A program made the translations under genes and the position numbers. The notes under the pieces were generated by a model, which saw only the letters and a list, made by a program, of their open reading frames with translations, had not been told where the DNA came from and made no database searches. Below, piece after piece: positions 1 through 10,468 of a stretch of 64,000 nt of DNA; within the stretch, counting starts at the first letter, position 1, and the number at the start of each line of letters is the position of its first letter. The DNA lies in the IMG/VR virus record IMGVR_UViG_3300035661_000001, positions 62,001 through 126,000 of that record; one strand, given 5' to 3'.

Positions 1-75
1 CTATTAATCAGTTTCAATTTCATCTGGAACATTTTCCAGACGATCCTCTCAATACTTTTAAGGAGATCTAGAAAA

Positions 76-819
76 ATGTCTTTCCGAATTGTTCCGTATA
101 AAAAGGGCAGTGAAGGTGCAAAGCTGCTTGCCTTGAAGATGACCGAGATTAGTGGTAAGAAGGTTGCCGCCGGTGATCCTAGCTATGACCATCGCAACCT
201 TCTTTGGGGAACTACAAAGTATCCCTTGCTGAATTTGCAGCCAGCTGCAAGTATCGCTATTGCTCAGAACAAATTGAGCACGCTCAACAAGCTGAAACAG
301 TCTGACGTTTCTGTTCCTGAATTCACTACTCTCAGAGCAACGGCAGAGGAGTGGATTAGAAACGGCACGGTAGTCGTGGCTCGCACGCTACTGAACGCTT
401 CTGAGGGGCGTGGAATCGTTGTTTGTCGTACGGTTGAGGAACTTGTTCCGGCGCCTTTGTATGTCAAGCTGGTTACCAAGGATAAAGAATTCAGAGTTCA
501 TGCCTGTAATGGTGTGGCTATTGATTTGCAGGAGAAGCGTCGCCGTAATGGAGCGCGTAATCCTGATGGCTCACGAATTGACGGTATGATTCGCAATATC
601 GACAATAACTGGGTTTTTTGCAGGAACGGTATTGCTGAGCCCCGAGGACTGAGAGATCTGGGTATTAAAGCCGTTCAAGCCCTGGGTCTGCTGTTTGGTG
701 CAGTGGATATCATTTACAACAGCCAGACCGGGCTAATGTATGTTTTGGAAGTTAATACCGCGCCTGGATTGTGTGAAAGCACCGCGACTCGGTATGCTCA
801 GGCGTTTCTGGCGCTGTGA
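76..819 (+). CDS. ATP-grasp (RimK-like) peptide ligase, phiEco32-type
   Basis: ATP-grasp motifs: 'NKLSTL..L', 'EGRGIVV', 'KEFRVH', C-terminal 'FGAVDII...YVLEVNTAPGL'. Confidence 0.88.
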   Translation: MSFRIVPYKKGSEGAKLLALKMTEISGKKVAAGDPSYDHRNLLWGTTKYPLLNLQPAASIAIAQNKLSTLNKLKQSDVSVPEFTTLRATAEEWIRNGTVVVARTLLNASEGRGIVVCRTVEELVPAPLYVKLVTKDKEFRVHACNGVAIDLQEKRRRNGARNPDGSRIDGMIRNIDNNWVFCRNGIAEPRGLRDLGIKAVQALGLLFGAVDIIYNSQTGLMYVLEVNTAPGLCESTATRYAQAFLAL

Positions 820-893
820 GTAAATGACTCCCTGGATCTGTCCGATCCATTCATTGAGGTGACAACTCATAGGGAGTTCTAAGGAATTGTAAT

Positions 894-3077
894 ATGGACG
901 AAGACGAGGATGACATTGAACAAGTAGATGCGCCAGCACCAGCTGAGGTGCCAGCTCCAATCGCCCAACCTGCCCAGCAAGTAGTTGAGAGAGGCGGCTT
1001 TGCAGCTTTCCAAGCCGCATTGGTTGCGGCAGGCGAAGCTGCCAGAGTAGTTAATCGCAACGTCATGAATTGGGGACGTATTGAGGAAGCAGATCGGCAA
1101 GTAGATCAACTTCTTGAGGAAGAGGAACAGCTTGTCGATGAAGCTTTTCATGAAGCGGAACATCGACGTCTTCATGATATAGAAGCGGGTCAAGTTCGAC
1201 CACGAGGCATAAATTGGTTTAGAGAGCTGGCTGTTAACGGCGGTGTCTTCGGCAGAGAAATTGCACCGAGACAAGCGGTTCCACAACCTGCGCTACCAGG
1301 ACCATATGTGCCATATGTAGCGTATCAGGAACGAGTACAAGATCCAATCTTCATCAACGACGACGATATACAACGAGCAGCAGCAAGACTTAGGGAACAA
1401 TTGAATGTTCCCGATCCATTCAACGAGGAAGACCCAAGAGCGGTAGGAAATGATATGAATTACGATCAATTGGTGAGACGTTTTCCAGCTTTGACTGATC
1501 GGTATCTTCCCGATCTTTCCAACCGGAACAACGCAGCCCGAGCACTTCAGCAGTTCGATCTCGATCAGTCTGGTAATGCTGTGGAGCGTGATCTGGAGCG
1601 TAATGCCCTCACCCTTTACCTCGCCGGTCATGCTCAGGCAGCTAACATCAACTATGCTTGGTGTGCCGAATGTGAGATGATGATTGGATTTGAAAATCAT
1701 ACTCACTGTCCGTTTTGTACCTATGCCATGGTTGAGCGTGGTGAGGGTGAGGCTCGTGGATCTCATCATCGAGATGGTTGTGCCAATTGTGGCGAATGCT
1801 GTCGAGTGAAGGGTCACCAGCACTGTCCTTCTTGTGATGCCCACATGGAACGAGGTTGTCGTTATTGTGGTAAGTGCGCAGCATGTTGTGCATGTGTCCT
1901 GTGCACTGTGGCGGGTTGCCAGTACATGCAGGAATGTGAGGATTGCAAGAAGTGCTATGAACACTGCACTTGTGTGGCAGTTGCATCTTCTGATCCCACT
2001 GGCAAGATTTATCCTGCGGGGAAACCTAGCGAACGTCGACAGTTTGATTCTGAGAGACTCTCTGGTATTGAGTGGGAGTACAATCGTGCGGCTGATACAC
2101 GTGCCATGGATCACTGGTGTAAAAAGTGGCGCGGTCATATCCACCGTGACGACTCTTGTGGTTTTGAAGCAGTGAGCGCTCCGGTGGCTGGTGATTACAT
2201 GGTCCGATGTATCACCTCTCTTGGAAAGGTTCTGACTCGGGCGACGATTGATGATCGATGTTCGATTCATACCCATGTTGATGCCAAGGATCTTCAATGG
2301 ACCGATATGTTTCGATTCTTGGACCTGTACGCCAGAGTCGAGCCCATCCTGTACATGATTGCTGGACAGGAGCGACTTGATAACAGATATGCGGTTCCGA
2401 TTGGTAAGGAATACGCAGTTGCATTGAAGCGAGTTGATCGCAAAGATGCTATCATGGCAGTAGCCTTCTGCCCTCTCGAAAGAGATGGTCGTAAGCACAC
2501 TGTGACTACGATGCCTGATCACGGCAGAAACTCTCAGAGAGAGAAGCCTGGACGGCGCGCTGATAATCATCAGTATTGTCGGCGTAAGGGTCTCAACATT
2601 CTTCCTTGGTTGGCAGGACGAGGTCCCAGACCTCAGACTCCCATCAACGCTCCGGTCAAGGCTGGAGATACATTGGAGAAGTTGGCTCACCGTCACGGTG
2701 TATCAGTGGCAGCTCTGATGCGTTGGAACAAGGTCAAGCCCGGTGGTAAACTTGGTAAGACTATCGTTATCAACAAGAGAACTCTTGCACCTGACACTAC
2801 GGTGGAATTCCGAATCCATCCGAACACTCATGACCCGATTCGAGTAATCAATTGGGTTAAGATGGTGAATCAGTTGGTAGAATGGGCTGCGACGAAAACA
2901 GATAAGGATCTGGAGAGCTTGCCGAAGTCTCCGCTCCGAATTCTGTGTGAGCATGTCGTACCTGAGTGTGCTCCTTGGATCATGGCTCGGGTCAAAGAAT
3001 GGCGTAAAGAAACGGCGAGAAACATCGGGCGTCAAGCCCGCCGAATTACCATTAAGGGTGGAAAGTACGTGTACTGA
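894..3077 (+). CDS. Putative amidoligase (Amidoligase_2 / GS-like fold) with Cys-rich region and inserted LysM domain
   Basis: 'GIEWEY', 'DDSCGFEAVSAP', 'CSIHTHVDA', 'TVEFRIH' motifs; LysM-like 'VKAGDTLEKLAHRHGVSVAALMRWN' at about 2652-2775; dense CxxC tract at about 1655-1975. Confidence 0.8.
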   Translation: MDEDEDDIEQVDAPAPAEVPAPIAQPAQQVVERGGFAAFQAALVAAGEAARVVNRNVMNWGRIEEADRQVDQLLEEEEQLVDEAFHEAEHRRLHDIEAGQVRPRGINWFRELAVNGGVFGREIAPRQAVPQPALPGPYVPYVAYQERVQDPIFINDDDIQRAAARLREQLNVPDPFNEEDPRAVGNDMNYDQLVRRFPALTDRYLPDLSNRNNAARALQQFDLDQSGNAVERDLERNALTLYLAGHAQAANINYAWCAECEMMIGFENHTHCPFCTYAMVERGEGEARGSHHRDGCANCGECCRVKGHQHCPSCDAHMERGCRYCGKCAACCACVLCTVAGCQYMQECEDCKKCYEHCTCVAVASSDPTGKIYPAGKPSERRQFDSERLSGIEWEYNRAADTRAMDHWCKKWRGHIHRDDSCGFEAVSAPVAGDYMVRCITSLGKVLTRATIDDRCSIHTHVDAKDLQWTDMFRFLDLYARVEPILYMIAGQERLDNRYAVPIGKEYAVALKRVDRKDAIMAVAFCPLERDGRKHTVTTMPDHGRNSQREKPGRRADNHQYCRRKGLNILPWLAGRGPRPQTPINAPVKAGDTLEKLAHRHGVSVAALMRWNKVKPGGKLGKTIVINKRTLAPDTTVEFRIHPNTHDPIRVINWVKMVNQLVEWAATKTDKDLESLPKSPLRILCEHVVPECAPWIMARVKEWRKETARNIGRQARRITIKGGKYVY

Positions 3078-3100
3078 ATTAACTGTCAGATGAATGATTC

Positions 3101-3616
3101 TTATTGATTATGTACAGCAACGGCTTTACAAACCTCAATGAATTGTTCATCTGACAAAATTCCCTTCCCACTATTTACAGAAGTATGAAGCCATCTGAGG
3201 TTTTCAATTTTATTTGAACCGCCTTTTGATTTCGGCATGATGTGATCAATACTAGCATTCTCCCCAACAGTTAAAGATAAACCACTAAGCGCACATTTCC
3301 CATCCTGTTTCCTCCATAACTCTTGGAGCGGCTGAATGAGTGCAGTGGAACCAAAAGTAGATGCTTTTATTGACCACCAACATTTTAAACAAAGAACAGT
3401 ATCACCGATAGGTATACCTGTTGCGCAGCTTCCACAACCGCCAGAAGATACTCGAATTTTTCTTCGGACGGATTCCCATCTTCTACGTTTTTGTAAATGC
3501 ACAATACAATATGTTGTATTTTCATGACGCGGATCATTACAAGAAGAACAGCAGCCTGTTGCAAGGCGTTTTTCGCGAAGAGCTTTTTGTAATAAGTTAG
3601 TTTTTGATTTTTTCAT
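3101..3616 (-). mobile_element. HNH homing endonuclease
   Basis: 'CALSG...SIDHIMPKSKGGSNKIENLRWLHTSVN'; AT-rich, antisense insertion in a GC-richer operon. Confidence 0.85.
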
Positions 3617-3688
3617 AGTTTAACCCCATAAAGATATTCACATAACATATAACACGTTATGTGCGAGTTTGAAAGGAAATAACACATT

Positions 3689-4678
3689 ATGTGCGGGCTG
3701 AGTGGTTATATTGGTTTGAGTTCTTCTACGGAAGATAAGTTGATGTTGATCCTCGGTCTCGGGGACGGTATTGACAACCGCGGAGGTCACGCTTGTGGCT
3801 ATGCTGCCATCGCAGAGGACGGAGATTTCCGATACGCTCGAAAGAGTGGTACTTGGATTCGTTCTCGTGTCAGGTTCGTTGAGGGCGCTGCGGGTCATAT
3901 CTGTATGATGCACGCGCGTTGGGCTACTTGTGGAAATCGTGAAGATCCCATGAATGCTCACCCGTTTGCTATTCGTCGCGGTGGACGTGTAGTGATGTGG
4001 GGCGCCCATAACGGTATGGTTCCGGATGCTTTTGCTAGCGCCAAAGCTCATGGTCGTGAGGTCGCCGTTGATAGTCAGGAAATCTTTGAGCTGTTGGCAG
4101 ACAAGGATTACGAAGGTATCCGGTCTCTGGCAGGTTACGGCGTGGCGACTTGGATTGATACTGATCATCGCGATCGTGTTCATCTGTGTCGTCTCTCTAG
4201 CAATTCCGACATCTGCGTCGTCTCTGTCAAGGGTGGCGGTTTGGTGTGGGCTTCTACCTGGAAGATCCTCAAGGATGCGCTTGCGGTGGCTGATCTTGAA
4301 GTCGAGCGCGAGTTCAAGATTGATGAGATTGGTCGAGTATATCGTTTGAGCGCTGACGGCGTGCGAAAGACCAAGCTCGGCGATATCAAGGTTGGATATC
4401 GTGCTCGTGGAATGAAATCTTCGGGATACTCTAGCGGTCCCGAAGCCGCCAAAGTAAGCGACATGGAGATTGATGAGGACGCTCTCGTCGAGACCAAAAA
4501 TCCTGGCGAGAGCGAACGAACCCAAAGCACCTCGTACTCTCCTTACATGAATGAGTATCAGCATTCTAATACTCCAGTACGTACCTCCGCCCCCACTGTG
4601 ACCAGAGAAAAAGGGGATCCCAAAAAAGAGTACGAGGATATAGAAGAGTATTACCGTGGCATGGGCTGGTGTGACTGA
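3689..4678 (+). CDS. Class II (Ntn) glutamine amidotransferase
   Basis: N-terminal 'MCGLSG' (Cys nucleophile), 'RGGHACG', 'HARWAT', 'HPF', 'HNG', 'DSQ'. Confidence 0.88.
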   Translation: MCGLSGYIGLSSSTEDKLMLILGLGDGIDNRGGHACGYAAIAEDGDFRYARKSGTWIRSRVRFVEGAAGHICMMHARWATCGNREDPMNAHPFAIRRGGRVVMWGAHNGMVPDAFASAKAHGREVAVDSQEIFELLADKDYEGIRSLAGYGVATWIDTDHRDRVHLCRLSSNSDICVVSVKGGGLVWASTWKILKDALAVADLEVEREFKIDEIGRVYRLSADGVRKTKLGDIKVGYRARGMKSSGYSSGPEAAKVSDMEIDEDALVETKNPGESERTQSTSYSPYMNEYQHSNTPVRTSAPTVTREKGDPKKEYEDIEEYYRGMGWCD

Positions 4679-4704
4679 TCTTCTCTTAGAGAGCTTATCT
4701 TAAA

Positions 4705-4732
4705 TTTTGCCCGGGCGGGTCTCCGGGCAAAA
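4705..4732. terminator. Stem-loop, probable intrinsic terminator
   Basis: TTTTGCCCGG / CCGGGCAAAA inverted repeat just after the GATase stop. Confidence 0.55.
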
Positions 4733-4961
4733 CCATTTCAACCCAACAACTAACTTAAGGAGGTGGCTGGCATGATCATTGTCACTCAAAATTCCACTTA
4801 TGAATTCGATAGCGATCAAGAAAGATATCGTAAAATTAAACCTAGCATTGGAATATGGAAAACCTATCATGGTTTTCTAATGGACCCATGTATTGGTAAT
4901 AGTTTACGTATCATACGTGACGCCAATACATTGACAACTACTTCTAGAATTACTCAGATTT

Positions 4962-5165
4962 TTGGAATCGAAGATGAGTAAAAGAGTTCCTTACGAGCAA
5001 GTAGCTATTCAAATGGATCGACTTTGGAATGTTAAAATTGATCCTACTGATGAAGCGGCAATGGAGAAACATTGTGATCTACTTCGAGGATATGTAGAAG
5101 GTTGTGGTTGGGATGTAGATGATTACATTCGACGAATGATGGACTTTCCTTCGTCGAAAAATTAA
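4962..5165 (+). CDS. Hypothetical protein
   Basis: Clean short ORF in the operon flow. Confidence 0.5.
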   Translation: MESKMSKRVPYEQVAIQMDRLWNVKIDPTDEAAMEKHCDLLRGYVEGCGWDVDDYIRRMMDFPSSKN

Positions 5166-5176
5166 GGACATCATCT

Positions 5177-5635
5177 ATGGAAGATACAAAAGTTACGTGT
5201 GCGTGCGCAGACGTATACAAAACTCTCCGTTGGGAGAGCGAAAAAGTTTCAGAACGTTTCAATGCTGAGTATCAGTATTGTGATTGTTCAAATTGTAACA
5301 AATCTGTTTACGCCGGAATTTGCCGGATGGCAGACAAACTGAATCAGAATAAACGTCTGAGTGCAAAGGAACAGAAGAATATGTCGTCAAAAGATAAACT
5401 TACGGTCAGCAAAGCTATCAAGTCTCTCCACGCCAAAAATGGCAAGGGCTTGAGTCTCAAAGAGTTTGCTCGTCGTTTGGTGCGAGATGGTAATGAGCTT
5501 GCCAAGGATTGGTTTGCCAATAAGGGCGGGGCTACCGTTGAGGCTCGATCGAAGTTGAAGGAAGAGCGAATCACCGCGGAAAAGGCTGCTACTAAGAGCG
5601 CCAAGAAGTCCAGCAAATCCGGCGCGAAGAAGTGA
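5177..5635 (+). CDS. Hypothetical basic protein (Lys/Ala-rich C-terminus)
   Basis: AAGGA upstream; ends 'KAATKSAKKSSKSGAKK'. Confidence 0.55.
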   Translation: MEDTKVTCACADVYKTLRWESEKVSERFNAEYQYCDCSNCNKSVYAGICRMADKLNQNKRLSAKEQKNMSSKDKLTVSKAIKSLHAKNGKGLSLKEFARRLVRDGNELAKDWFANKGGATVEARSKLKEERITAEKAATKSAKKSSKSGAKK

Positions 5636-5664
5636 TTCTTCTTACCAAATAAAGGAAAACAGAA

Positions 5665-7083
5665 ATGTCTATCAATGTAATTGATCTGATGAATCTTTTG
5701 AAGGCTCAACCTAACGGACTCGTGGTTCGCCTTGTTACTCGTAACGTGCCTGAAATGAAGAACGCAAACGGTTGTGTGACCGCACGCGCCTATACTTTCA
5801 AGGAAGATATCTATTCTGTTCTAAATGTCTCTGACTATGGCGATGGAGAGATGTACGTTTCGTTCTTGCTATCGACCGGAGCACAGGATTGGGCTTATGT
5901 TCCGAATGATTTTCAGTTCGTTGTTTTGAATGACGAAGAGAAGAAAGAATTAGAGGCAACCTTCGAAAAGCGCCAAATGGAAAATCTTCATTCCCATTTG
6001 GTTCACTCTGGCTCGGTTGGTGCTTGGGCTGAGTTTTTCGTTGTGAACGATAAGAATGAAGTTATTCCTGGAGACCTGATTTCCAAGCGTTCGACCGGAC
6101 CTGGAAATCGTTATGGTACTATCTCTGCAAGTGGCAATGCGTCAAGTGTGGAGTTTCAGACGACCTTCAATAGCTGTTTGGCTGGAACCATTGATAGCAT
6201 GGCGTGCGGACTCAAGAGCGCGTATGATCAGGCACGGGAGAAATTCCCTACTGCCAAAATCTCTACACAGTCTGTGAAAAAACTTCCTCTGGAAGCACTC
6301 AAGGCTCTTGACGAGACGTCATTGTCATTGAAGAAATTTGATGTCAAAAACGCATATGGTTTCAAACGCAATGCTGAGGTTGACATTCCGATGCGCGCTT
6401 GCCAGACGGCTTTTCAGTTTCAGTTGAATGGCATGATTGGTCTTTCTGATGATCGAGCTAAGTCGATCACTAAGACTATTGACGCTACTCTGGGCGTCGC
6501 ATGTGTCTCGCTTCTTGCCAAGTATAACCAGCTTGATCGTGTTAAGCTGGGTGGTTTGCCTGGTGATTATCGAACTACTCCAAACCAGTTGGAATATTAT
6601 GGTTTGGGAAACACCTGGATGATGCACCCCATGTGCGCTAACCTGGTCTTTGACTTTGCGCGTAAATGCGCAGTGTTTGGAGAAAAGGGTTTTGGCAAAC
6701 ATTGGATTGCCTCTGAGGATGAGGTCGTCAGTTGTATGATGGAGCTGAATGTCGATCTCGCTCGGGAGATCATGGGTCGAAATAAGGACATCATGATAAA
6801 GATGTTCAAGGCTGCCTGGCCAATTTGTCGTGGTGATTCGGCTACTGGTGTTCCCAACCTTAGCAACGATATCAAGCCGGAGAAGGCTCAGGAATTTGTC
6901 TGGGAGGTATTCAATAACGGTATTGAATCCGTTCTGGGAGACATCTCCGAGAATATGACTTCCAATTGGACCATGGATGGCAAGTGGATCCGTCACTCGG
7001 AAGGTGATGATAAGAACGTTTGGAGAACCATCAATGCGCGGCACGGTGCGCGTAAGTTCACCAATCAGATTATCTACGGTTGA
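5665..7083 (+). CDS. Divergent phiEco32-like COOH-NH2 ligase (type 2)
   Basis: 'VGAWAEFFV' resembles GxDxEFF; 'YRTTPNQLEYYGLGNTW' resembles YR...EYRxLSNxW; context of ATP-grasp and GATase. Confidence 0.6.
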   Translation: MSINVIDLMNLLKAQPNGLVVRLVTRNVPEMKNANGCVTARAYTFKEDIYSVLNVSDYGDGEMYVSFLLSTGAQDWAYVPNDFQFVVLNDEEKKELEATFEKRQMENLHSHLVHSGSVGAWAEFFVVNDKNEVIPGDLISKRSTGPGNRYGTISASGNASSVEFQTTFNSCLAGTIDSMACGLKSAYDQAREKFPTAKISTQSVKKLPLEALKALDETSLSLKKFDVKNAYGFKRNAEVDIPMRACQTAFQFQLNGMIGLSDDRAKSITKTIDATLGVACVSLLAKYNQLDRVKLGGLPGDYRTTPNQLEYYGLGNTWMMHPMCANLVFDFARKCAVFGEKGFGKHWIASEDEVVSCMMELNVDLAREIMGRNKDIMIKMFKAAWPICRGDSATGVPNLSNDIKPEKAQEFVWEVFNNGIESVLGDISENMTSNWTMDGKWIRHSEGDDKNVWRTINARHGARKFTNQIIYG

Positions 7084-7092
7084 TAACAAGTC

Positions 7093-7124
7093 TGCAGGGG
7101 AGGGAAACCTTTCCCTCCCCTGCA
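7093..7124. terminator. Strong hairpin between convergent genes
   Basis: Perfect 15-bp stem TGCAGGGGAGGGAAA / TTTCCCTCCCCTGCA. Confidence 0.7.
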
Positions 7125-7125
7125 C

Positions 7126-7824
7126 TTACCGATTCTCTTCTGTCTCAAGAAACAGTTTGGCATTTGTCAAACATAAAATATCGTTATTAAACAATGCTAG
7201 AGCCTTGTTACATTTTGAACAAAGTTCATCACGAATTTTTCTGTATTTGTAATTTTGATCTTTAAAGATAGTCTCATTAGAAGATTTATTGCAGATACGG
7301 CAAGTATTTGTATGCACATGCACATCTGTTTGTAAAGATAAATATTTCCAAGTTTCTCCGTGCTTAATAGATGAAATAGTTGATCTACTAACTTCATATA
7401 TTTTAGCAAGTTTACTTTGAGATAAAAGAGATGACTTAATCTCTAATACCTGAGTTTCTGTTAACTTAGTTATGTAATCATGGTTTCCTCTTCTTTTCTT
7501 TTCACGGTCAATAGCATTTGTTTGATGTGTACCTGTAAATAAATGATTTGGATTAACGCAAATAGGGTTATCACACGAATGACAAATGATCATCCCATCT
7601 GGAATCTTTCCTTTGTGTAATTCGTATGAATACCGATGCGCCACAGTATGCCCAAGGTCTTTGCTGATACGGAAATAACCGTAGCCATTATTGCCTTGCC
7701 GACATGCCAACCATATCCAACAATTGTTGTCATCAGATTTTTGTACTTTTTTCCAAAATCTGATCTCAGCATCTTCTGAAGTAAAAACCATGTTTATGTA
7801 ACCCCTTTCATAAACATATTTCAT
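7126..7824 (-). mobile_element. HNH homing endonuclease (HNH_3 type, with HTH and endonuclease VII-like tail)
   Basis: 'CWIW...AHRYSY...ICHSCDNPICVNPNHL..GT...N'. Confidence 0.88.
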
Positions 7825-7847
7825 TATTAATAGAAAGTATAAAAAAA

Positions 7848-8072
7848 ATGTTTAAATGTCAAATAACTGGTAAAATGAGTAAGCCTGGTGAGAAGTCGAA
7901 TAAACTGGTTCTCGAAACTAGAGAGAAAGTTTATTATGGTTTCGTCCTCAATGAAGAAACCGAAGAAATGGAAGAGGTTGAAGTCGGTCGTGGCTTCGAG
8001 GTAGTCAAAGAAGTAAATGCTACCGACGAGGGAGCGAAGATTTGGCTGAGCCGGCAGGGTCTGAATCCCTGA
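7848..8072 (+). CDS. Small hypothetical phage protein
   Basis: Clean ORF 'MFKCQITGK...GFEVVKEV'. Confidence 0.6.
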   Translation: MFKCQITGKMSKPGEKSNKLVLETREKVYYGFVLNEETEEMEEVEVGRGFEVVKEVNATDEGAKIWLSRQGLNP

Positions 8073-8993
8073 TTGAATAATAGTTTGCGGCTTCTATTCA
8101 AAAAGCCGCACTGTTTGTAAAACTAGATTGTTGATCGCGGAAGCTAGCCAAAAATGAATAAGGAAGAATCTTTTCAAAATCAACTTGATATCCTTAATGA
8201 TAAGCTATCAAATTCTCGCAGCAAGATTTCTGTACTGAAGAGAAAGCTCACAGATGAAGAATCGCGCGCGATTGAATTGCAACTAGTTAAAGCTTCTTTA
8301 TTGGAAGCTTGGAGAAAACATAAAGCTTCTTTACCATCTTGTTCAGAAAAAGAACAGAAAGAAAAAGAAATTGATGAGGAGTTTCTTCGGAAACTTCCGT
8401 TTCTTTTGGAGAAAGTATAATGTCAGATCTGATTTCTCATTCCGCCACGGTATCTTTTCGATACCTTGATGGAGGATATTACGAAGATGATCCTGTTTTT
8501 TCTTATAAAGGACCTGTAGGCGAGGCTTATGTAGAGCTTACAGCACCTAAAGTGCCGGGCAGACATAATGGAAACGTTAAAGTAACAATTACCATTGAGC
8601 CAGTTGAAGATGCTAGACATATTTGGATTGAATGTGAAGATGAATCTTTCAACGAAATGTGTTTGGCTTGTGGCGTGGTGGCAGAACATGATGACTGGAA
8701 TGGGGTAAAGCACCCTGATACTTCTTGTCCTGGTGAAAAGGAATAACAAATGATTGGATATTATTGTTCTACTTGTGGTACAGAACATAGACACCTGGGT
8801 GATTGTCCATACTCAGGTGGATATGGACACGATACTTATCGTGGCGCACCGGAACGTGATTACACTTCAGTTTTTATTCCTTCCGACATAAGGGTTAAAG
8901 AAACTATTACTGTACAGTTGCCTTCTGGAGATCGCATAACTCTTAAAAGGATTGATTGAATGTCAGTAGACGATTTTGAAAAGGACGAAAGCG

Positions 8994-10468
8994 ATGAGTA
9001 ATGAAAAATGGGAAGCTCATAAAAAACTAGCAGAACGTGTTAGAGATTCTTTGGAATCTCGATTGGAATCGAATCCTAGTTCCATTTTTCTGAACGGTAA
9101 TGGTCATTCGTTGAACGAACGAAGTATAGGTCATCTTAGCCTATTGAATTTTATTGTTTTTCCGGAAGATGATCTAATCAAAATCGAACGTGGGGAAAAA
9201 GTTGAACCGCAACCTTTTTCTTTTGGTGGCGGACAATGTTGGTATTGTGGAGATTATTATACTAGTACATTCGATGGTGTGACTATTACTGCCGATTCGA
9301 AATGCAAATTCCCGGTGGAATTCAGGAGCATTCTTTTGAATTGAATGTCCCTTCTGGTCGGATGGTTTTTGCAAATGATCTGCGGCAGTGGTTTCAGATG
9401 CACACCGATTTCAACATTAATGCTGATCTTGGAAAAGTTAAAACCACAGAGGCTTATGCTAAGATCGGAATGGCTCATGCTTTTGTCGGCAATTCTTGCC
9501 CTGCTGTTTATCAGGTGGATGATTCAAATCTTTCCATTTCTAGACATGGATCAGAAGCCGGCGACGAGTGTTATGATTCAGAAGTTGACGATTATGTTGA
9601 GTTAACCAAAGAGCAAGCAGAAGCGAGAACTCCTCCAGGCAAAGAAGTTGGGTATATTTGTACTGATCTTTGGTGGTATTCAGTTGTTGATTATGATGAT
9701 TTTCAACGCCACTTTTTGGAAAAAGGAACTGAAAAACAGTTTCTGAAATACATCAAGGATAGCTGTAACGTAGTCTCTGTTAAACCTGGGACATATAAGT
9801 TTACTCATCGTGAGGACCGTGAAGATAAAGAAAAAGGTATGAAACCTTTTCACTATGCCACAATCATATGGGACCGAGATTCAGAAGGTGTTGATCTTTT
9901 CTCTGAATATAAAAAGATCAATTATACCATTGGTCAGTGCTGGTTGGCGAACAAACTTCGTCAAGCTAAATATTTTGAGAAAAATAGAGATCTCTCTCTT
10001 GAAGAGCATATAGAAAAATACAAAGCTTTGGCGCCAGAAGCATTAGAGGAATTAGCAGCGAGCTATTATTCCGATATCTTCTGTAGTTTTGATCTTGGCT
10101 CCTGGCATCCGAATGGTTGGGCTGGTGGTCAAGAAATGCCTGACAACCTTCCTGATTTTACTCTACCTCCCTTGACCAGAAAACATTTTTGGTGGGATAT
10201 GAACGAAGAATATTGTGGTCTTTTCTTGGCTTCTACAGGAGAAGAATCATATTTGGGATTTAATATTCCTACACTGAATGAAAGCTTCTTGACAGCAGCT
10301 TATGAAATGTGTTATTCTATTTTGAAGTTCGGAGCTGATGGATTTAAAAAAGCTGTGGATGATCCTAAATCTGAAAAAGAAAAACAGCAACTGACACTGA
10401 AAGCCCTGAAAAATCTCAACAAAAGATTCCCAGGAACCTTGCCAGAAAAGTGTAAAGAGTTTCTGTGA
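8994..10468 (+). CDS. Hypothetical protein, one gene split by a 1-nt indel near 9310
   Basis: ORFs 8976-9344 and 9302-10468 join as ...CKFPGGIQEHSFELNVPSG... if one T is added to the T-run. Confidence 0.55.

What the first reader, a model, noticed from the sequence alone, without database searches (positions are those of the whole stretch)
76..7083. Four-enzyme amide/peptide ligation cluster (ATP-grasp, amidoligase, GATase II, COOH-NH2 ligase)
Seen: four co-oriented genes with similar, GC-richer composition, interrupted by an HNH and small ORFs. Established: this combination defines the phiEco32-like amidoligase system, where a GATase can supply ammonia to ligases. Inference: a complete pathway making an amidated peptide tag or metabolite whose product is unknown. 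The cluster may extend left of the window.
Basis: partly seen in the sequence, partly recalled or inferred. Interest (0 to 1): 0.65.

Follow-up and report, generated by a model that had tools for sequence, protein, structure and literature searches.

The report
Giant-phage amide-ligase gene cluster
A 452-kb phage from microbial mats carries the known but never characterised "phiEco32-type" set of amide-bond enzymes, in a variant whose main ligase has a cell-wall-binding insert and whose fourth "ligase" has lost most of its catalytic residues.

Summary
Window 76-7083 has four co-oriented, GC-richer genes: an ATP-grasp ligase, an Amidoligase_2 enzyme, a class-II glutamine amidotransferase (GATase II) and a relative of the phiEco32 COOH-NH2 ligase type 2. 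An HNH gene and three small ORFs interrupt them. Gene order is conserved in four related large-phage contigs, and the same families cluster in phiEco32, CW02, phiM6, QDWS535 and UFV-P2. So this is a member of a system predicted in 2009 whose product is still unknown.

- The 472-aa "ligase" has the glutamine-synthetase/GCS2/PafA fold but lacks 4 of 7 family-conserved active-site residues. Its orthologues share the losses, and it is under purifying selection. It is probably a non-catalytic paralogue.
- The window is not the whole pathway. Two canonical type-2 ligases in tandem plus a GGACT gene lie about 30 kb upstream, and a second GGACT gene lies 9 kb upstream.
- The amidoligase carries a conserved multi-cysteine module and a LysM domain inserted in its catalytic domain. 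A 74-aa ORF (7848-8072) belongs to the conserved neighbourhood.

Both HNH genes are mobile insertions. The likeliest chemistry is making and editing gamma-glutamyl-type amides, possibly on peptidoglycan-derived substrates. That is inference.

The parts
76..819 (+). ATP-grasp ligase, 247 aa, RimK/LysX/MptN-like. Shine-Dalgarno AAGGAG lies 8 nt upstream of the ATG.
   Evidence: phrog_2599 E 6e-61. Nearest NCBIfam models are RimK family, MptN and LysX, then Ddl, all far below their cut-offs. The C-terminal D...E-x-N motif aligns to Ddl structures. 83% identical to the L008 orthologue with dN/dS about 0.03, though synonymous sites are saturated. Start site.
894..3077 (+). Amidoligase_2 enzyme, 727 aa. 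Acidic low-complexity N-terminus (aa 1 to about 230), conserved multi-Cys module, and a glutamine-synthetase-like catalytic domain (aa about 385-727).
   Evidence: PF12224 28.8 bits. Alignment A2 of 27 homologues has invariant E393/E395, D419-S-C-G-x-E425, H459/H461/D463 and E638-F-R640. This is the only PF12224 gene in the genome.
1677..1973 (+). Cys/His-rich module inside the amidoligase (aa about 262-360). Probably a multi-zinc cluster.
   Evidence: 16 cysteines between C296 and C358 are at least 90% conserved in A2. No Pfam family matches this stretch. Zinc binding is inferred.
2622..2783 (+). LysM domain inserted in the catalytic domain of the amidoligase (aa about 577-630).
   Evidence: PF01476 E 7e-8, 32.7 bits against a cut-off of 20.9. 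The insert lies between the conserved LAGR and DTTVEFR motifs. It aligns in 14 of 27 homologues and carries a precomputed LysM Pfam call in 12 of them; the rest have only a short loop.
3101..3616 (-). Free-standing HNH homing endonuclease, 171 aa, inserted between the amidoligase and GATase genes.
   Evidence: HNH_5/HNH Pfam hits. GC 38.8%, against 50-52% for its neighbours. Present in L008. Absent in the 447.7-kb relative, where the amidoligase and GATase genes sit 1 nt apart. A diverged contig in run X1 skips 3075-3729 with only 44 nt between.
3689..4678 (+). Stand-alone class-II (Ntn) glutamine amidotransferase domain, 329 aa, with a roughly 70-aa acidic, probably disordered tail.
   Evidence: GATase_6 35.1 bits; phrog_14519 E 3e-19. 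Cys2, R-G, H-x-R-x-x-T-x-G, N-A-H-P-F, H-N-G and D-S-E motifs are conserved with phiEco32 gp83, CW02 gp3 and others.
4772..4981 (+). Small ORF, 69 aa, with an acidic C-terminus ending in Glu. It overlaps the next ORF by 8 nt.
   Evidence: No family match. 68% identical orthologue in L008, which also ends in an acidic run; dN/dS about 0.13. Seen only in the closest relatives.
4974..5165 (+). Small ORF, 63 aa.
   Evidence: Orthologues in L008 and L010, directly upstream of the ligase-like gene in L010. dN/dS about 0.12. No family match.
5177..5635 (+). ORF of 152 aa, with a Cys-containing N-terminal half and a Lys-rich C-terminal half.
   Evidence: Orthologue in L008; the C-terminal half is also found in L009. 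dN/dS about 0.21. No family or Atlas lead.
5665..7083 (+). Catalytically degenerate paralogue of the phiEco32-type COOH-NH2 ligase type 2, 472 aa. An N-terminal beta-rich domain (aa 1 to about 108) precedes the ligase-fold domain (aa about 110-450).
   Evidence: 814 homologues at E<=1e-3. AF2 model pLDDT 90. VIA Z 15.8 to YbdK/GCS2, 15.3 to Dop/PafA and about 13 to glutamine synthetase. W121, A249, Q251 and Y312 replace the family's D, H, H and R. dN/dS about 0.13 against L008.
7093..7124 (.). Perfect 14-bp-stem palindromic hairpin between the convergent ligase-like and HNH genes. Terminator-like.
7126..7824 (-). Second free-standing homing endonuclease, 232 aa (HNH_3 plus an Endonuclease_7-like C-terminus). 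It separates the ligase-like gene from the 74-aa ORF.
   Evidence: PF13392 E 8e-11. GC 33%. Absent at this position in L008, L010, L019, L020 and the 447.7-kb relative.
7848..8072 (+). Conserved 74-aa ORF that follows the ligase-like gene in relatives. Function unknown.
   Evidence: Orthologues lie directly downstream of the ligase-like gene in L008, L010, L019 and L020, and within the cluster in L009. ESM Atlas: 21 virus-only clusters score 0.9 or more. dN/dS about 0.09.

Best explanation
This is the phiEco32-type phage amidoligase system, rearranged and spread across a 452-kb phage genome. It most likely acts in the cytoplasm of the infected cell to make and trim gamma-glutamyl-type amide bonds on a small substrate.

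Shown:
- The ATP-grasp, the Amidoligase_2 enzyme and the class-II GATase keep their families' active-site residues.
- The Amidoligase_2 and GATase genes are the invariant adjacent pair.
- The 472-aa protein has the carboxylate-amine-ligase fold but lacks four of seven conserved active-site residues, and is still under purifying selection.
- Two canonical type-2 ligases and two GGACT genes lie upstream in the same genome.

Inferred:
- Like every characterised enzyme of the glutamine-synthetase fold, the amidoligase activates a carboxylate with ATP, probably a glutamate gamma-carboxylate, and joins it to an amine or to ammonia.
- The GATase either delivers ammonia from glutamine to that ligase or hydrolyses a gamma-glutamyl amide.
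- The RimK/LysX-like ATP-grasp adds a further amino acid, most likely glutamate.
- The GGACT enzymes later release an amine by cyclising gamma-glutamyl to 5-oxoproline.
- The degenerate ligase-like protein, with the 74-aa protein encoded beside it, serves as a non-catalytic binding or regulatory subunit.
- The LysM domain inserted in the amidoligase's catalytic domain points to a GlcNAc-containing substrate, namely a peptidoglycan precursor or muropeptide. The purpose would then be phage-directed cell-wall editing, for example to exclude other phages or to control lysis.
For: - Family assignments and active-site residues.
- System membership and synteny. Amidoligase and GATase genes stay adjacent even in a distant 72-kb contig that shows no ATP-grasp or type-2 ligase Pfam call near them.
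- Ligase fold of the 472-aa protein: pLDDT 90; Z 15.8, 15.3 and about 13 to GCS2/YbdK, Dop/PafA and glutamine synthetase.
- Degeneracy: 53 of 68 family members keep at least 6 of the 7 conserved residues (D-x-E, E, H-x-H, E-x-R). The window protein has W121, A249, Q251 and Y312, and the L008 and L010 orthologues show similar losses. The genome's other two paralogues are canonical.
- Purifying selection: dN/dS about 0.13.
- Extra components: PF14395 twice in tandem plus GGACT at genome 28.5-32.8 kb, and GGACT at 52.6 kb. A tandem canonical ligase pair also occurs in L018.
- LysM: 32.7 bits, aligned as an insert in 14 of 27 homologues.
- Glutamate theme: the nearest NCBIfam models for the ATP-grasp are RimK, MptN and LysX. 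GGACT/GGCT and C26 gamma-glutamyl hydrolase genes sit in the clusters of other phages.
- The cell-wall and superinfection idea is how two papers summarise the 2009 prediction (PMC10580990; PMC11318856).
Against: - No product, substrate or phenotype is known for any member of this system in the papers searched.
- LysM is absent from about half of the closest amidoligase homologues and from the small-phage versions, so it cannot define the substrate of the whole family.
- The protein has no signal peptide, whereas LysM domains usually act outside the cytoplasm.
- The multi-cysteine module would fit a protein or nucleic-acid partner as well.
- Missing conserved residues do not prove that the 472-aa protein is inactive; it may have a different activity.
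- A predicted amidoligase-GATase complex gave no verdict, which counts neither way.
- No RNA data exist to show co-expression.
Confidence: 0.5

Rival explanations
1. Protein or peptide tagging, or carrier-protein chemistry, as in pupylation, RimK on ribosomal protein S6, or the LysW/LysX amino-group carrier. The ligases would act on the C-terminal glutamate of a small phage or host protein, for example the 69-aa ORF. The GATase-fold enzyme would act as a deamidase or trimming hydrolase, and the degenerate ligase would be a Dop-like or adaptor paralogue.
For: - The ATP-grasp is nearest to RimK and LysX.
- The ligase fold matches PafA/Dop as well as it matches GCS2 (Z 15.3 against 15.8).
- The 69-aa ORF and its L008 orthologue end in an acidic run with a terminal Glu. 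An unrelated 81-aa ORF overlapping the start of the ligase-like gene in L019 also ends in an acidic run with a terminal Glu.
- The multi-Cys module could be a protein-binding surface.
Against: - The 69-aa ORF is found only in the closest relatives; no homologue was found in L009 or L010. None is obvious in the small phages.
- There is no Pup-like Gly-Gly-Gln/Glu end.
- GGACT enzymes need a gamma-glutamyl group with a free alpha-amino group, which does not fit a protein's C-terminal Glu (established enzymology, not tested here).
- This model does not explain the LysM insert.
Confidence: 0.2
2. Synthesis or turnover of a soluble gamma-glutamyl metabolite, such as a gamma-glutamyl-polyamine or a glutathione-like or other short peptide, that helps replication or packaging or acts on the host. 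This would parallel PuuA/PuuD or EgtA/EgtC, which pair a glutamine-synthetase-like ligase with an amidohydrolase.
For: - All the families present (glutamine-synthetase-like ligases, Ntn GATase, GGACT, RimK-like ATP-grasp, and C26 hydrolase in other phages) share gamma-glutamyl amide chemistry.
- In small phages the cluster sits in the early or replication region, beside the primase/helicase and polymerase genes.
Against: - It does not explain the LysM insert or the large Cys module of the amidoligase.
- It does not explain why three type-2 ligase paralogues are kept, one of them degenerate.
- No candidate acceptor-producing gene is linked to the cluster.
Confidence: 0.18
3. Amino-acid or amide hypermodification of phage DNA or of an RNA, to evade restriction or other defences.
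For: The cluster lies next to replication genes in small phages. In this genome it shares a region with RNA-ligase, HD-domain and cytidylyltransferase-like genes. Cys/His zinc modules often bind nucleic acids (general knowledge).
Against: None of the families typical of known base-hypermodification pathways was seen in the cluster. Characterised ligases of this fold act on amino-acid or peptide carboxylates, not on bases. LysM has no known nucleic-acid role. No evidence of modified DNA was found for any phage carrying the system in the papers searched.
Confidence: 0.08
4. The genes are adjacent by chance or by shared ancestry of a large syntenic block, and do not work together.
For: L008 is collinear with the window over more than 20 kb, so its synteny alone proves little. 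L009 lacks the ligase-like gene at this place.
Against: The same four or five families cluster in unrelated small phages with otherwise different genomes and a different gene order. The amidoligase-GATase pair persists in distant contigs.
Confidence: 0.04

Closest known systems
Escherichia phage phiEco32 gp77-gp86 amidoligase module. Predicted by Iyer, Abhiman, Burroughs and Aravind (Mol Biosyst 2009); the source of Pfam PF14395 and PF12224.
   Same: The same five families: RimK-like ATP-grasp, Amidoligase_2, class-II GATase, COOH-NH2 ligase type 2, and GGCT/GGACT. The amidoligase gene lies directly upstream of the GATase gene, and small ORFs of unknown function are interspersed.
   Different: - Here the set is split into three places over 40 kb of a 452-kb genome.
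- The ATP-grasp and type-2 ligase have swapped sides.
- There are three type-2 ligase paralogues of 470-516 aa (268 aa in phiEco32), and the cluster-linked one is degenerate.
- The amidoligase is twice as long, with Cys and LysM modules.
- The GATase is only the Ntn domain (329 aa against 676 aa).
- Two HNH genes are inserted.
LUZ24-like Pseudomonas phages (UFV-P2, tf), Salinivibrio phage CW02, Sinorhizobium phage phiM6 and Alcaligenes phage QDWS535.
   Same: The same gene families are clustered. UFV-P2 also has an HNH gene between the amidoligase and GATase genes, and phiM6 has one next to its GATase II gene.
   Different: These are 46-68-kb phages. Some add a C26 gamma-glutamyl hydrolase or class-I GATase, which this genome lacks. 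ATP-grasp identity to the window is at most about 41%.
PafA/Dop of the pupylation system, and YbdK/GCS2 and gamma-glutamylcysteine ligases (the glutamine-synthetase-fold carboxylate-amine ligases).
   Same: They share the fold of residues 110-450 of the 472-aa protein (Z 15-16). PafA and Dop are also a paralogue pair with different activities built on one fold.
   Different: Sequence identity is only 10-14%. The window protein lacks the acidic, His and Arg residues that its own family conserves. No Pup-like substrate or proteasome genes were seen.
Peptidoglycan-stem amidation and branching enzymes: MurT/GatD, AsnB1/LtsA, and the ATP-grasp D-aspartate ligase of Enterococcus. Recalled from my own knowledge, not tested here.
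   Same: A glutamine-hydrolysing subunit works with an ATP-dependent ligase to amidate a stem-peptide carboxylate, and an ATP-grasp adds a branch amino acid. This is the working analogy suggested by the LysM insert.
   Different: The protein families differ: MurT is Mur-ligase-like, GatD is a class-I GATase, and AsnB is an asparagine-synthetase type. No homology is claimed, and no substrate evidence exists here.
Gamma-glutamyl 'make and remove' pathways: PuuA/PuuD, EgtA/EgtC and butirosin BtrJ/BtrG. Recalled from my own knowledge.
   Same: They pair a glutamine-synthetase-like or ATP-grasp ligase that forms a gamma-glutamyl amide with a GATase-fold hydrolase or a GGCT-fold enzyme that removes it. 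These are the same fold classes seen here.
   Different: Those pathways have known acceptors and further tailoring enzymes that are not linked here. The resemblance is at the level of enzyme folds only.

Membership tests
phiEco32-type phage amidoligase system | RimK-like ATP-grasp gene of the phage family phrog_2599 | tested here: met
   E 6e-61 over 252 residues. It is the only copy in the genome.
phiEco32-type phage amidoligase system | Amidoligase_2 (PF12224) gene with intact glutamine-synthetase-like motifs | tested here: met
   28.8 bits against a cut-off of 22. E-x-E, H-x-H-x-D and E-F-R motifs are invariant in 27 homologues.
phiEco32-type phage amidoligase system | Class-II GATase gene next to, and downstream of, the amidoligase gene | tested here: met
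   Adjacency is seen in the window (across an inserted HNH gene), the 447.7-kb contig, L008, a 72-kb contig, phiEco32 and UFV-P2; the order is kept with one or two genes between in L009 and L010.
phiEco32-type phage amidoligase system | COOH-NH2 ligase type 2 (PF14395) that passes the family threshold | tested here: not met
   The window gene scores 12.6 bits against a cut-off of 25 and 13.7 bits in the genome scan. It is homologous by transitivity and by fold. Two other genes in the same genome do pass, at 55.2 and 50.1 bits, so the feature is met at genome level but not inside the reported cluster.
phiEco32-type phage amidoligase system | GGCT/AIG2-like (GGACT) gene associated with the system | tested here: met
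   Two GGACT genes in the genome, at 80.4 and 63.2 bits. One lies directly after the tandem canonical ligases and the other 9 kb upstream of the window. Neither lies inside 76-7083.
phiEco32-type phage amidoligase system | A defined biochemical product | not testable with these tools
   No experimental characterisation was found in the papers searched.
Carboxylate-amine ligase superfamily (glutamine synthetase / GCS2 / PafA fold), for the 472-aa protein | The fold | tested here: met
   pLDDT 90. Z 15.8 with rmsd 3.7 over 262 residues to 1tt4; Z 15.3 to Dop; Z about 13 to glutamine synthetases. Foldseek probability 1.0.
Carboxylate-amine ligase superfamily (glutamine synthetase / GCS2 / PafA fold), for the 472-aa protein | Conserved metal- and phosphate-binding residues (D-x-E, E, H-x-H, E-x-R in the PF14395-type family) | tested here: not met
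   Only 3 of 7 are kept (E123, E163, E310). W121, A249, Q251 and Y312 replace D, H, H and R. 53 of 68 relatives keep at least 6 of 7.
Class-II (Ntn) glutamine amidotransferase | N-terminal nucleophile Cys after Met1, plus the Arg, Asn-Gly and Asp of the glutamine site | tested here: met
   The protein starts Met-Cys-Gly. The motifs are invariant across nine phage homologues. Their assignment to PurF/GlmS residues is from memory.
LysM domain | Passes the Pfam gathering threshold | tested here: met
   32.7 bits against 20.9, residues 588-616. PF01476 is also precomputed for 12 homologues. Glycan binding was not tested.
Pupylation-like or LysW-like carrier/tag system | A small substrate or carrier protein with a defined C-terminal Glu/Gln motif, conserved together with the ligases | tested here: inconclusive
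   The 69-aa ORF ends in an acidic run with a terminal Glu, in the window and in L008. No homologue was found in L009 or L010. An unrelated acidic-tailed ORF occurs in L019.

The most novel reading that the evidence does not exclude
A giant phage edits its host's peptidoglycan precursors from inside the cell. A cytoplasmic LysM-bearing, zinc-rich amidoligase, working with a glutaminase, a glutamate-type ATP-grasp and a conserved pseudo-ligase subunit, would attach or amidate gamma-glutamyl-type groups on muropeptides. This would be a previously undescribed kind of phage-directed cell-wall remodelling. It would also give the first assigned substrate for the phiEco32-type system, which has been without one since 2009.
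Probability: 0.2. Interest if true: 0.8.

Novelty: new variant of a known kind. Interest (0 to 1): 0.45.

Why it matters
Genes of this system are annotated in hundreds of phage genomes; the ATP-grasp alone matches 313 phage records. These include therapy-relevant Pseudomonas and E. coli phages. No product or role has been shown since the system was predicted in 2009.

This variant adds three concrete handles for experiments:
- A LysM insert that names a testable substrate class.
- A conserved pseudo-ligase and a 74-aa partner that suggest a multi-subunit machine.
- A split layout that separates a core trio (ATP-grasp, amidoligase, GATase) from the canonical type-2 ligases and GGACT genes.

It is also a clean example of homing endonucleases repeatedly landing at the same gene junction in distant phages.

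Tried and rejected
- Megablast of 1-7900 against cultured phages gave no match.
- A degenerate-pattern search for close relatives of the 472-aa protein in IMG/VR found none.
- A single-sequence AlphaFold model of the 472-aa protein was unusable, at pLDDT 33. It was replaced by the alignment-based model.
- Sequence searches of the PDB found nothing useful for the 472-aa protein, alone or as a profile, or for the GATase.
- Complex prediction for amidoligase 380-727 with GATase 1-262 scored 0.14, under the 0.32 mark. The tool gives no verdict, so this is not evidence either way.
- ESM Atlas gave nothing usable for the 152-aa ORF, and only unnamed viral clusters for the 74-aa ORF.
- The 2009 Iyer et al. 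paper is not held. Its proposal is quoted second-hand from PMC10580990 and PMC11318856.
- No RNA runs hold the locus, so co-expression is untested.
- Leftward contiguous extension is rejected. The upstream ORFs (L002 12978-14180, 14739-15710 and 15724-16071) have no relevant family match, and no counterparts of matching size appear in the 447.7-kb relative's gene list.
- Peptidase_C26 is not in this genome.
- Decay of the ligase-like gene as a pseudogene is rejected. The frame is intact and dN/dS is about 0.13.

Full report
**Setting.**
The window is bases 62,001-126,000 of a 451,956-bp virus record. The record has a 254-bp exact direct terminal repeat and 36.5% GC. Near-identical DNA occurs in microbial-mat and sediment metagenomes. 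No RNA run holds it. There is no nucleotide-level relative among cultured phages.

**1.
Genes on the + strand:

| Coordinates | Size | Assignment | Main evidence |
|---|---|---|---|
| 76-819 | 247 aa | ATP-grasp | phrog_2599, E 6e-61 |
| 894-3077 | 727 aa | Amidoligase_2 with LysM | 28.8 bits (cut-off 22); 32.7 bits (cut-off 20.9) |
| 3689-4678 | 329 aa | Class-II GATase | starts Met-Cys; GATase_6 35.1 bits (cut-off 27) |
| 5665-7083 | 472 aa | COOH-NH2 ligase type 2-like | see section 2 |

- An HNH gene (3101-3616) lies on the minus strand between the second and third genes.
- Three small ORFs (4772-4981, 4974-5165, 5177-5635) lie between the third and fourth genes.
- A second HNH gene (7126-7824, minus strand) follows immediately after the fourth.
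- The enzyme genes are 46-52% GC, while the HNH genes and small ORFs are 33-39%.

**2. The fourth gene.**
Taken alone, it barely touches the ligase family: phrog_3815 at E 5e-4 and PF14395 at E 0.08. An exhaustive HMMER search gave 814 homologues, and 62 of 68 aligned ones hit PF14395.

An AlphaFold model built on that alignment has pLDDT 90. Residues 110-450 of the model match these structures:
- YbdK/GCS2, Z 15.8
- gamma-glutamylcysteine ligases, Z about 14-15.7
- Dop/PafA, Z 15.3
- glutamine synthetases, Z about 13

So the protein has the carboxylate-amine ligase fold.

The family conserves seven residues in four strand motifs (D-x-E, E, H-x-H, E-x-R). Of 68 members, 53 keep at least six of them. 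The window protein has W121, A249, Q251 and Y312 in place of D, H, H and R. Its orthologues in L008 (69% identical) and L010 (31% identical) show similar losses.

The gene is not decaying. dN/dS against L008 is about 0.13, like its neighbours. I read it as a conserved, probably non-catalytic paralogue. That reading is an inference from sequence.

**3. The window is not the whole system.**
The genome holds two canonical type-2 ligases in tandem, of 516 and 499 aa. They score 55 and 50 bits on PF14395 and about 1e-35 on phrog_3815. A 324-aa GGACT protein follows them, all at genome 28.5-32.8 kb. A 122-aa GGACT gene lies at 52.6 kb.
- A tandem canonical pair also occurs in another contig, L018.
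- There is only one Amidoligase_2 gene and one ATP-grasp of this type.
- There is no C26 peptidase.
- The genes directly left of the window have no relevant matches and appear to be missing from a 447.7-kb relative.

**4. Synteny.**
Gene order in the relatives (numbers without a name are small ORFs of that size in aa):

| Contig | Order |
|---|---|
| 447.7-kb ENA contig | ATP-grasp 245, amidoligase 693, GATase 328, four small ORFs, 459-aa protein; no HNH genes |
| L008 | as in the window, with the first HNH but not the second |
| L010 | ATP-grasp, amidoligase, HD-domain gene, membrane ORF, GATase, 68, ligase-like 456, 75 |
| L009 | ATP-grasp, amidoligase, 67, GATase, 102, 74; no ligase-like gene |
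| distant 72-kb contig | amidoligase next to GATase; no ATP-grasp or type-2 ligase Pfam call nearby |

phiEco32, CW02, phiM6, QDWS535 and UFV-P2 cluster the same families in other orders.

The 74-aa ORF at 7848-8072 follows the ligase-like gene in L008, L010, L019 and L020. It belongs to a widespread virus-only family. In the window, only the inserted HNH gene separates it from the ligase-like gene.

**5. The amidoligase.**
Alignment of 27 homologues shows:
- Invariant glutamine-synthetase-type motifs: E393/E395, H459/H461/D463 and E638-F-R640.
- Sixteen nearly invariant cysteines between C296 and C358. This is probably a multi-zinc module.
- A LysM domain inserted between two conserved catalytic-domain motifs. 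It aligns in 14 of the 27, and 12 of those carry a precomputed LysM Pfam call.
- A first 230 residues that are acidic, of low complexity and variable, apart from a conserved Met-Asp-Glu-Glu start.

**6. The GATase and the ATP-grasp.**
The GATase is a bare Ntn domain with a disordered tail. Cys2 and the R-G, H-x-R-x-x-T-x-G, N-A-H-P-F, H-N-G and D-S-E motifs are shared with phiEco32 gp83 and others.

The ATP-grasp is nearest to the RimK, MptN and LysX glutamate ligases, then to Ddl. All these matches fall far below the subfamily cut-offs.

**7. The HNH genes are mobile.**
- Both have low GC.
- The first is absent in the 447.7-kb relative. A diverged contig in run X1 skips 3075-3729 with only 44 nt between.
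- The second is absent from every relative examined.
- UFV-P2, an unrelated small podovirus, also has an HNH gene between its amidoligase and GATase genes.
- A 15-18-nt imperfect copy of the GATase start region lies about 30 nt upstream of the real start, in the window and in L008. This may be a trace of the insertion.

**8. Mechanism.**
Every family present makes or breaks gamma-glutamyl-type amide bonds in characterised relatives. Glutamine-synthetase-fold ligases and RimK-type ATP-grasps make them. Ntn GATases and GGACT break them. This rests on established enzymology recalled from memory.

The best reading is a pathway that builds and trims such amides, with the amidoligase-GATase pair as its core. 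The LysM insert suggests a GlcNAc-containing substrate. That agrees with the cell-wall idea attributed to the 2009 prediction.

The substrate remains inference. The rivals are protein tagging, a soluble metabolite, and nucleic-acid modification. They are scored separately.

**9. Novelty.**
The system is a known kind, predicted in 2009, with Pfam and PHROG families and hundreds of annotated instances. Its product is unknown. The following appear new relative to what I could find:
- the giant-phage setting;
- the split layout;
- the LysM and Cys-module amidoligase;
- the conserved degenerate ligase with its 74-aa neighbour.

I rate the finding a new variant of a known kind, of moderate interest.

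- Read laying received 5,401 letters.
- No alternative genetic code was used.
- The exhaustive protein search was used only for the protein that the family scans left open.

Noticed in passing
window 8976-9344 and 9302-10468: Two overlapping + strand ORFs in different frames (122 aa and 388 aa) together match a single 511-aa gene in L008 and a 490-aa gene in L009. The gene is split here by a frameshift, a sequencing error or recoding. No family match.
   Followed up: partly
own genome G000 about 412,000-436,000 (outside the window): A roughly 25-kb stretch has 53-65% GC in a genome of 36.5% GC. It could be an acquired island or an assembly chimera.
   Followed up: no
window 3650-3667 and 3680-3697: An imperfect direct repeat of the GATase start region (AACACRTTATGTGCG). 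The upstream copy abuts the inserted HNH cassette, and L008 has a similar partial copy. It may be a footprint of the homing event.
   Followed up: partly
window 2800-8200, runs X1 and X7: The source sample also holds a diverged relative (a 9.6-kb contig) without the first HNH gene. A rock/sediment variant, 90-99% alike, has no contig cover over either HNH gene while the flanks are covered. A gap in contigs proves nothing on its own.
   Followed up: partly
window 4704-4735 and 7093-7124: GC-rich hairpins directly follow the GATase gene and the ligase-like gene. The second is a perfect 14-bp-stem palindrome between convergent genes. They may be transcription stops that divide the cluster into two units.
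   Followed up: no
L002 9648-10331 and 12978-14180 (genome 55.6-60.2 kb): An HD_4 phosphohydrolase gene and a 400-aa cytidylyltransferase-like gene lie upstream. In relatives, an RNA-ligase gene and a DUF7275/DUF7277 gene share this region, and in L010 the HD_4 gene sits between the amidoligase and GATase genes.
   Followed up: no
L019 191-436: An 81-aa ORF overlapping the start of a degenerate ligase-like gene ends in an acidic run with a terminal Glu. This resembles the unrelated 69-aa ORF of the window.
   Followed up: no
L010 5704-8793: The related 34-kb phage contig encodes a 1,029-aa class-I aminoacyl-tRNA-synthetase-like protein two genes upstream of its ATP-grasp, and a GGACT gene about 8.5 kb upstream.
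   Followed up: no
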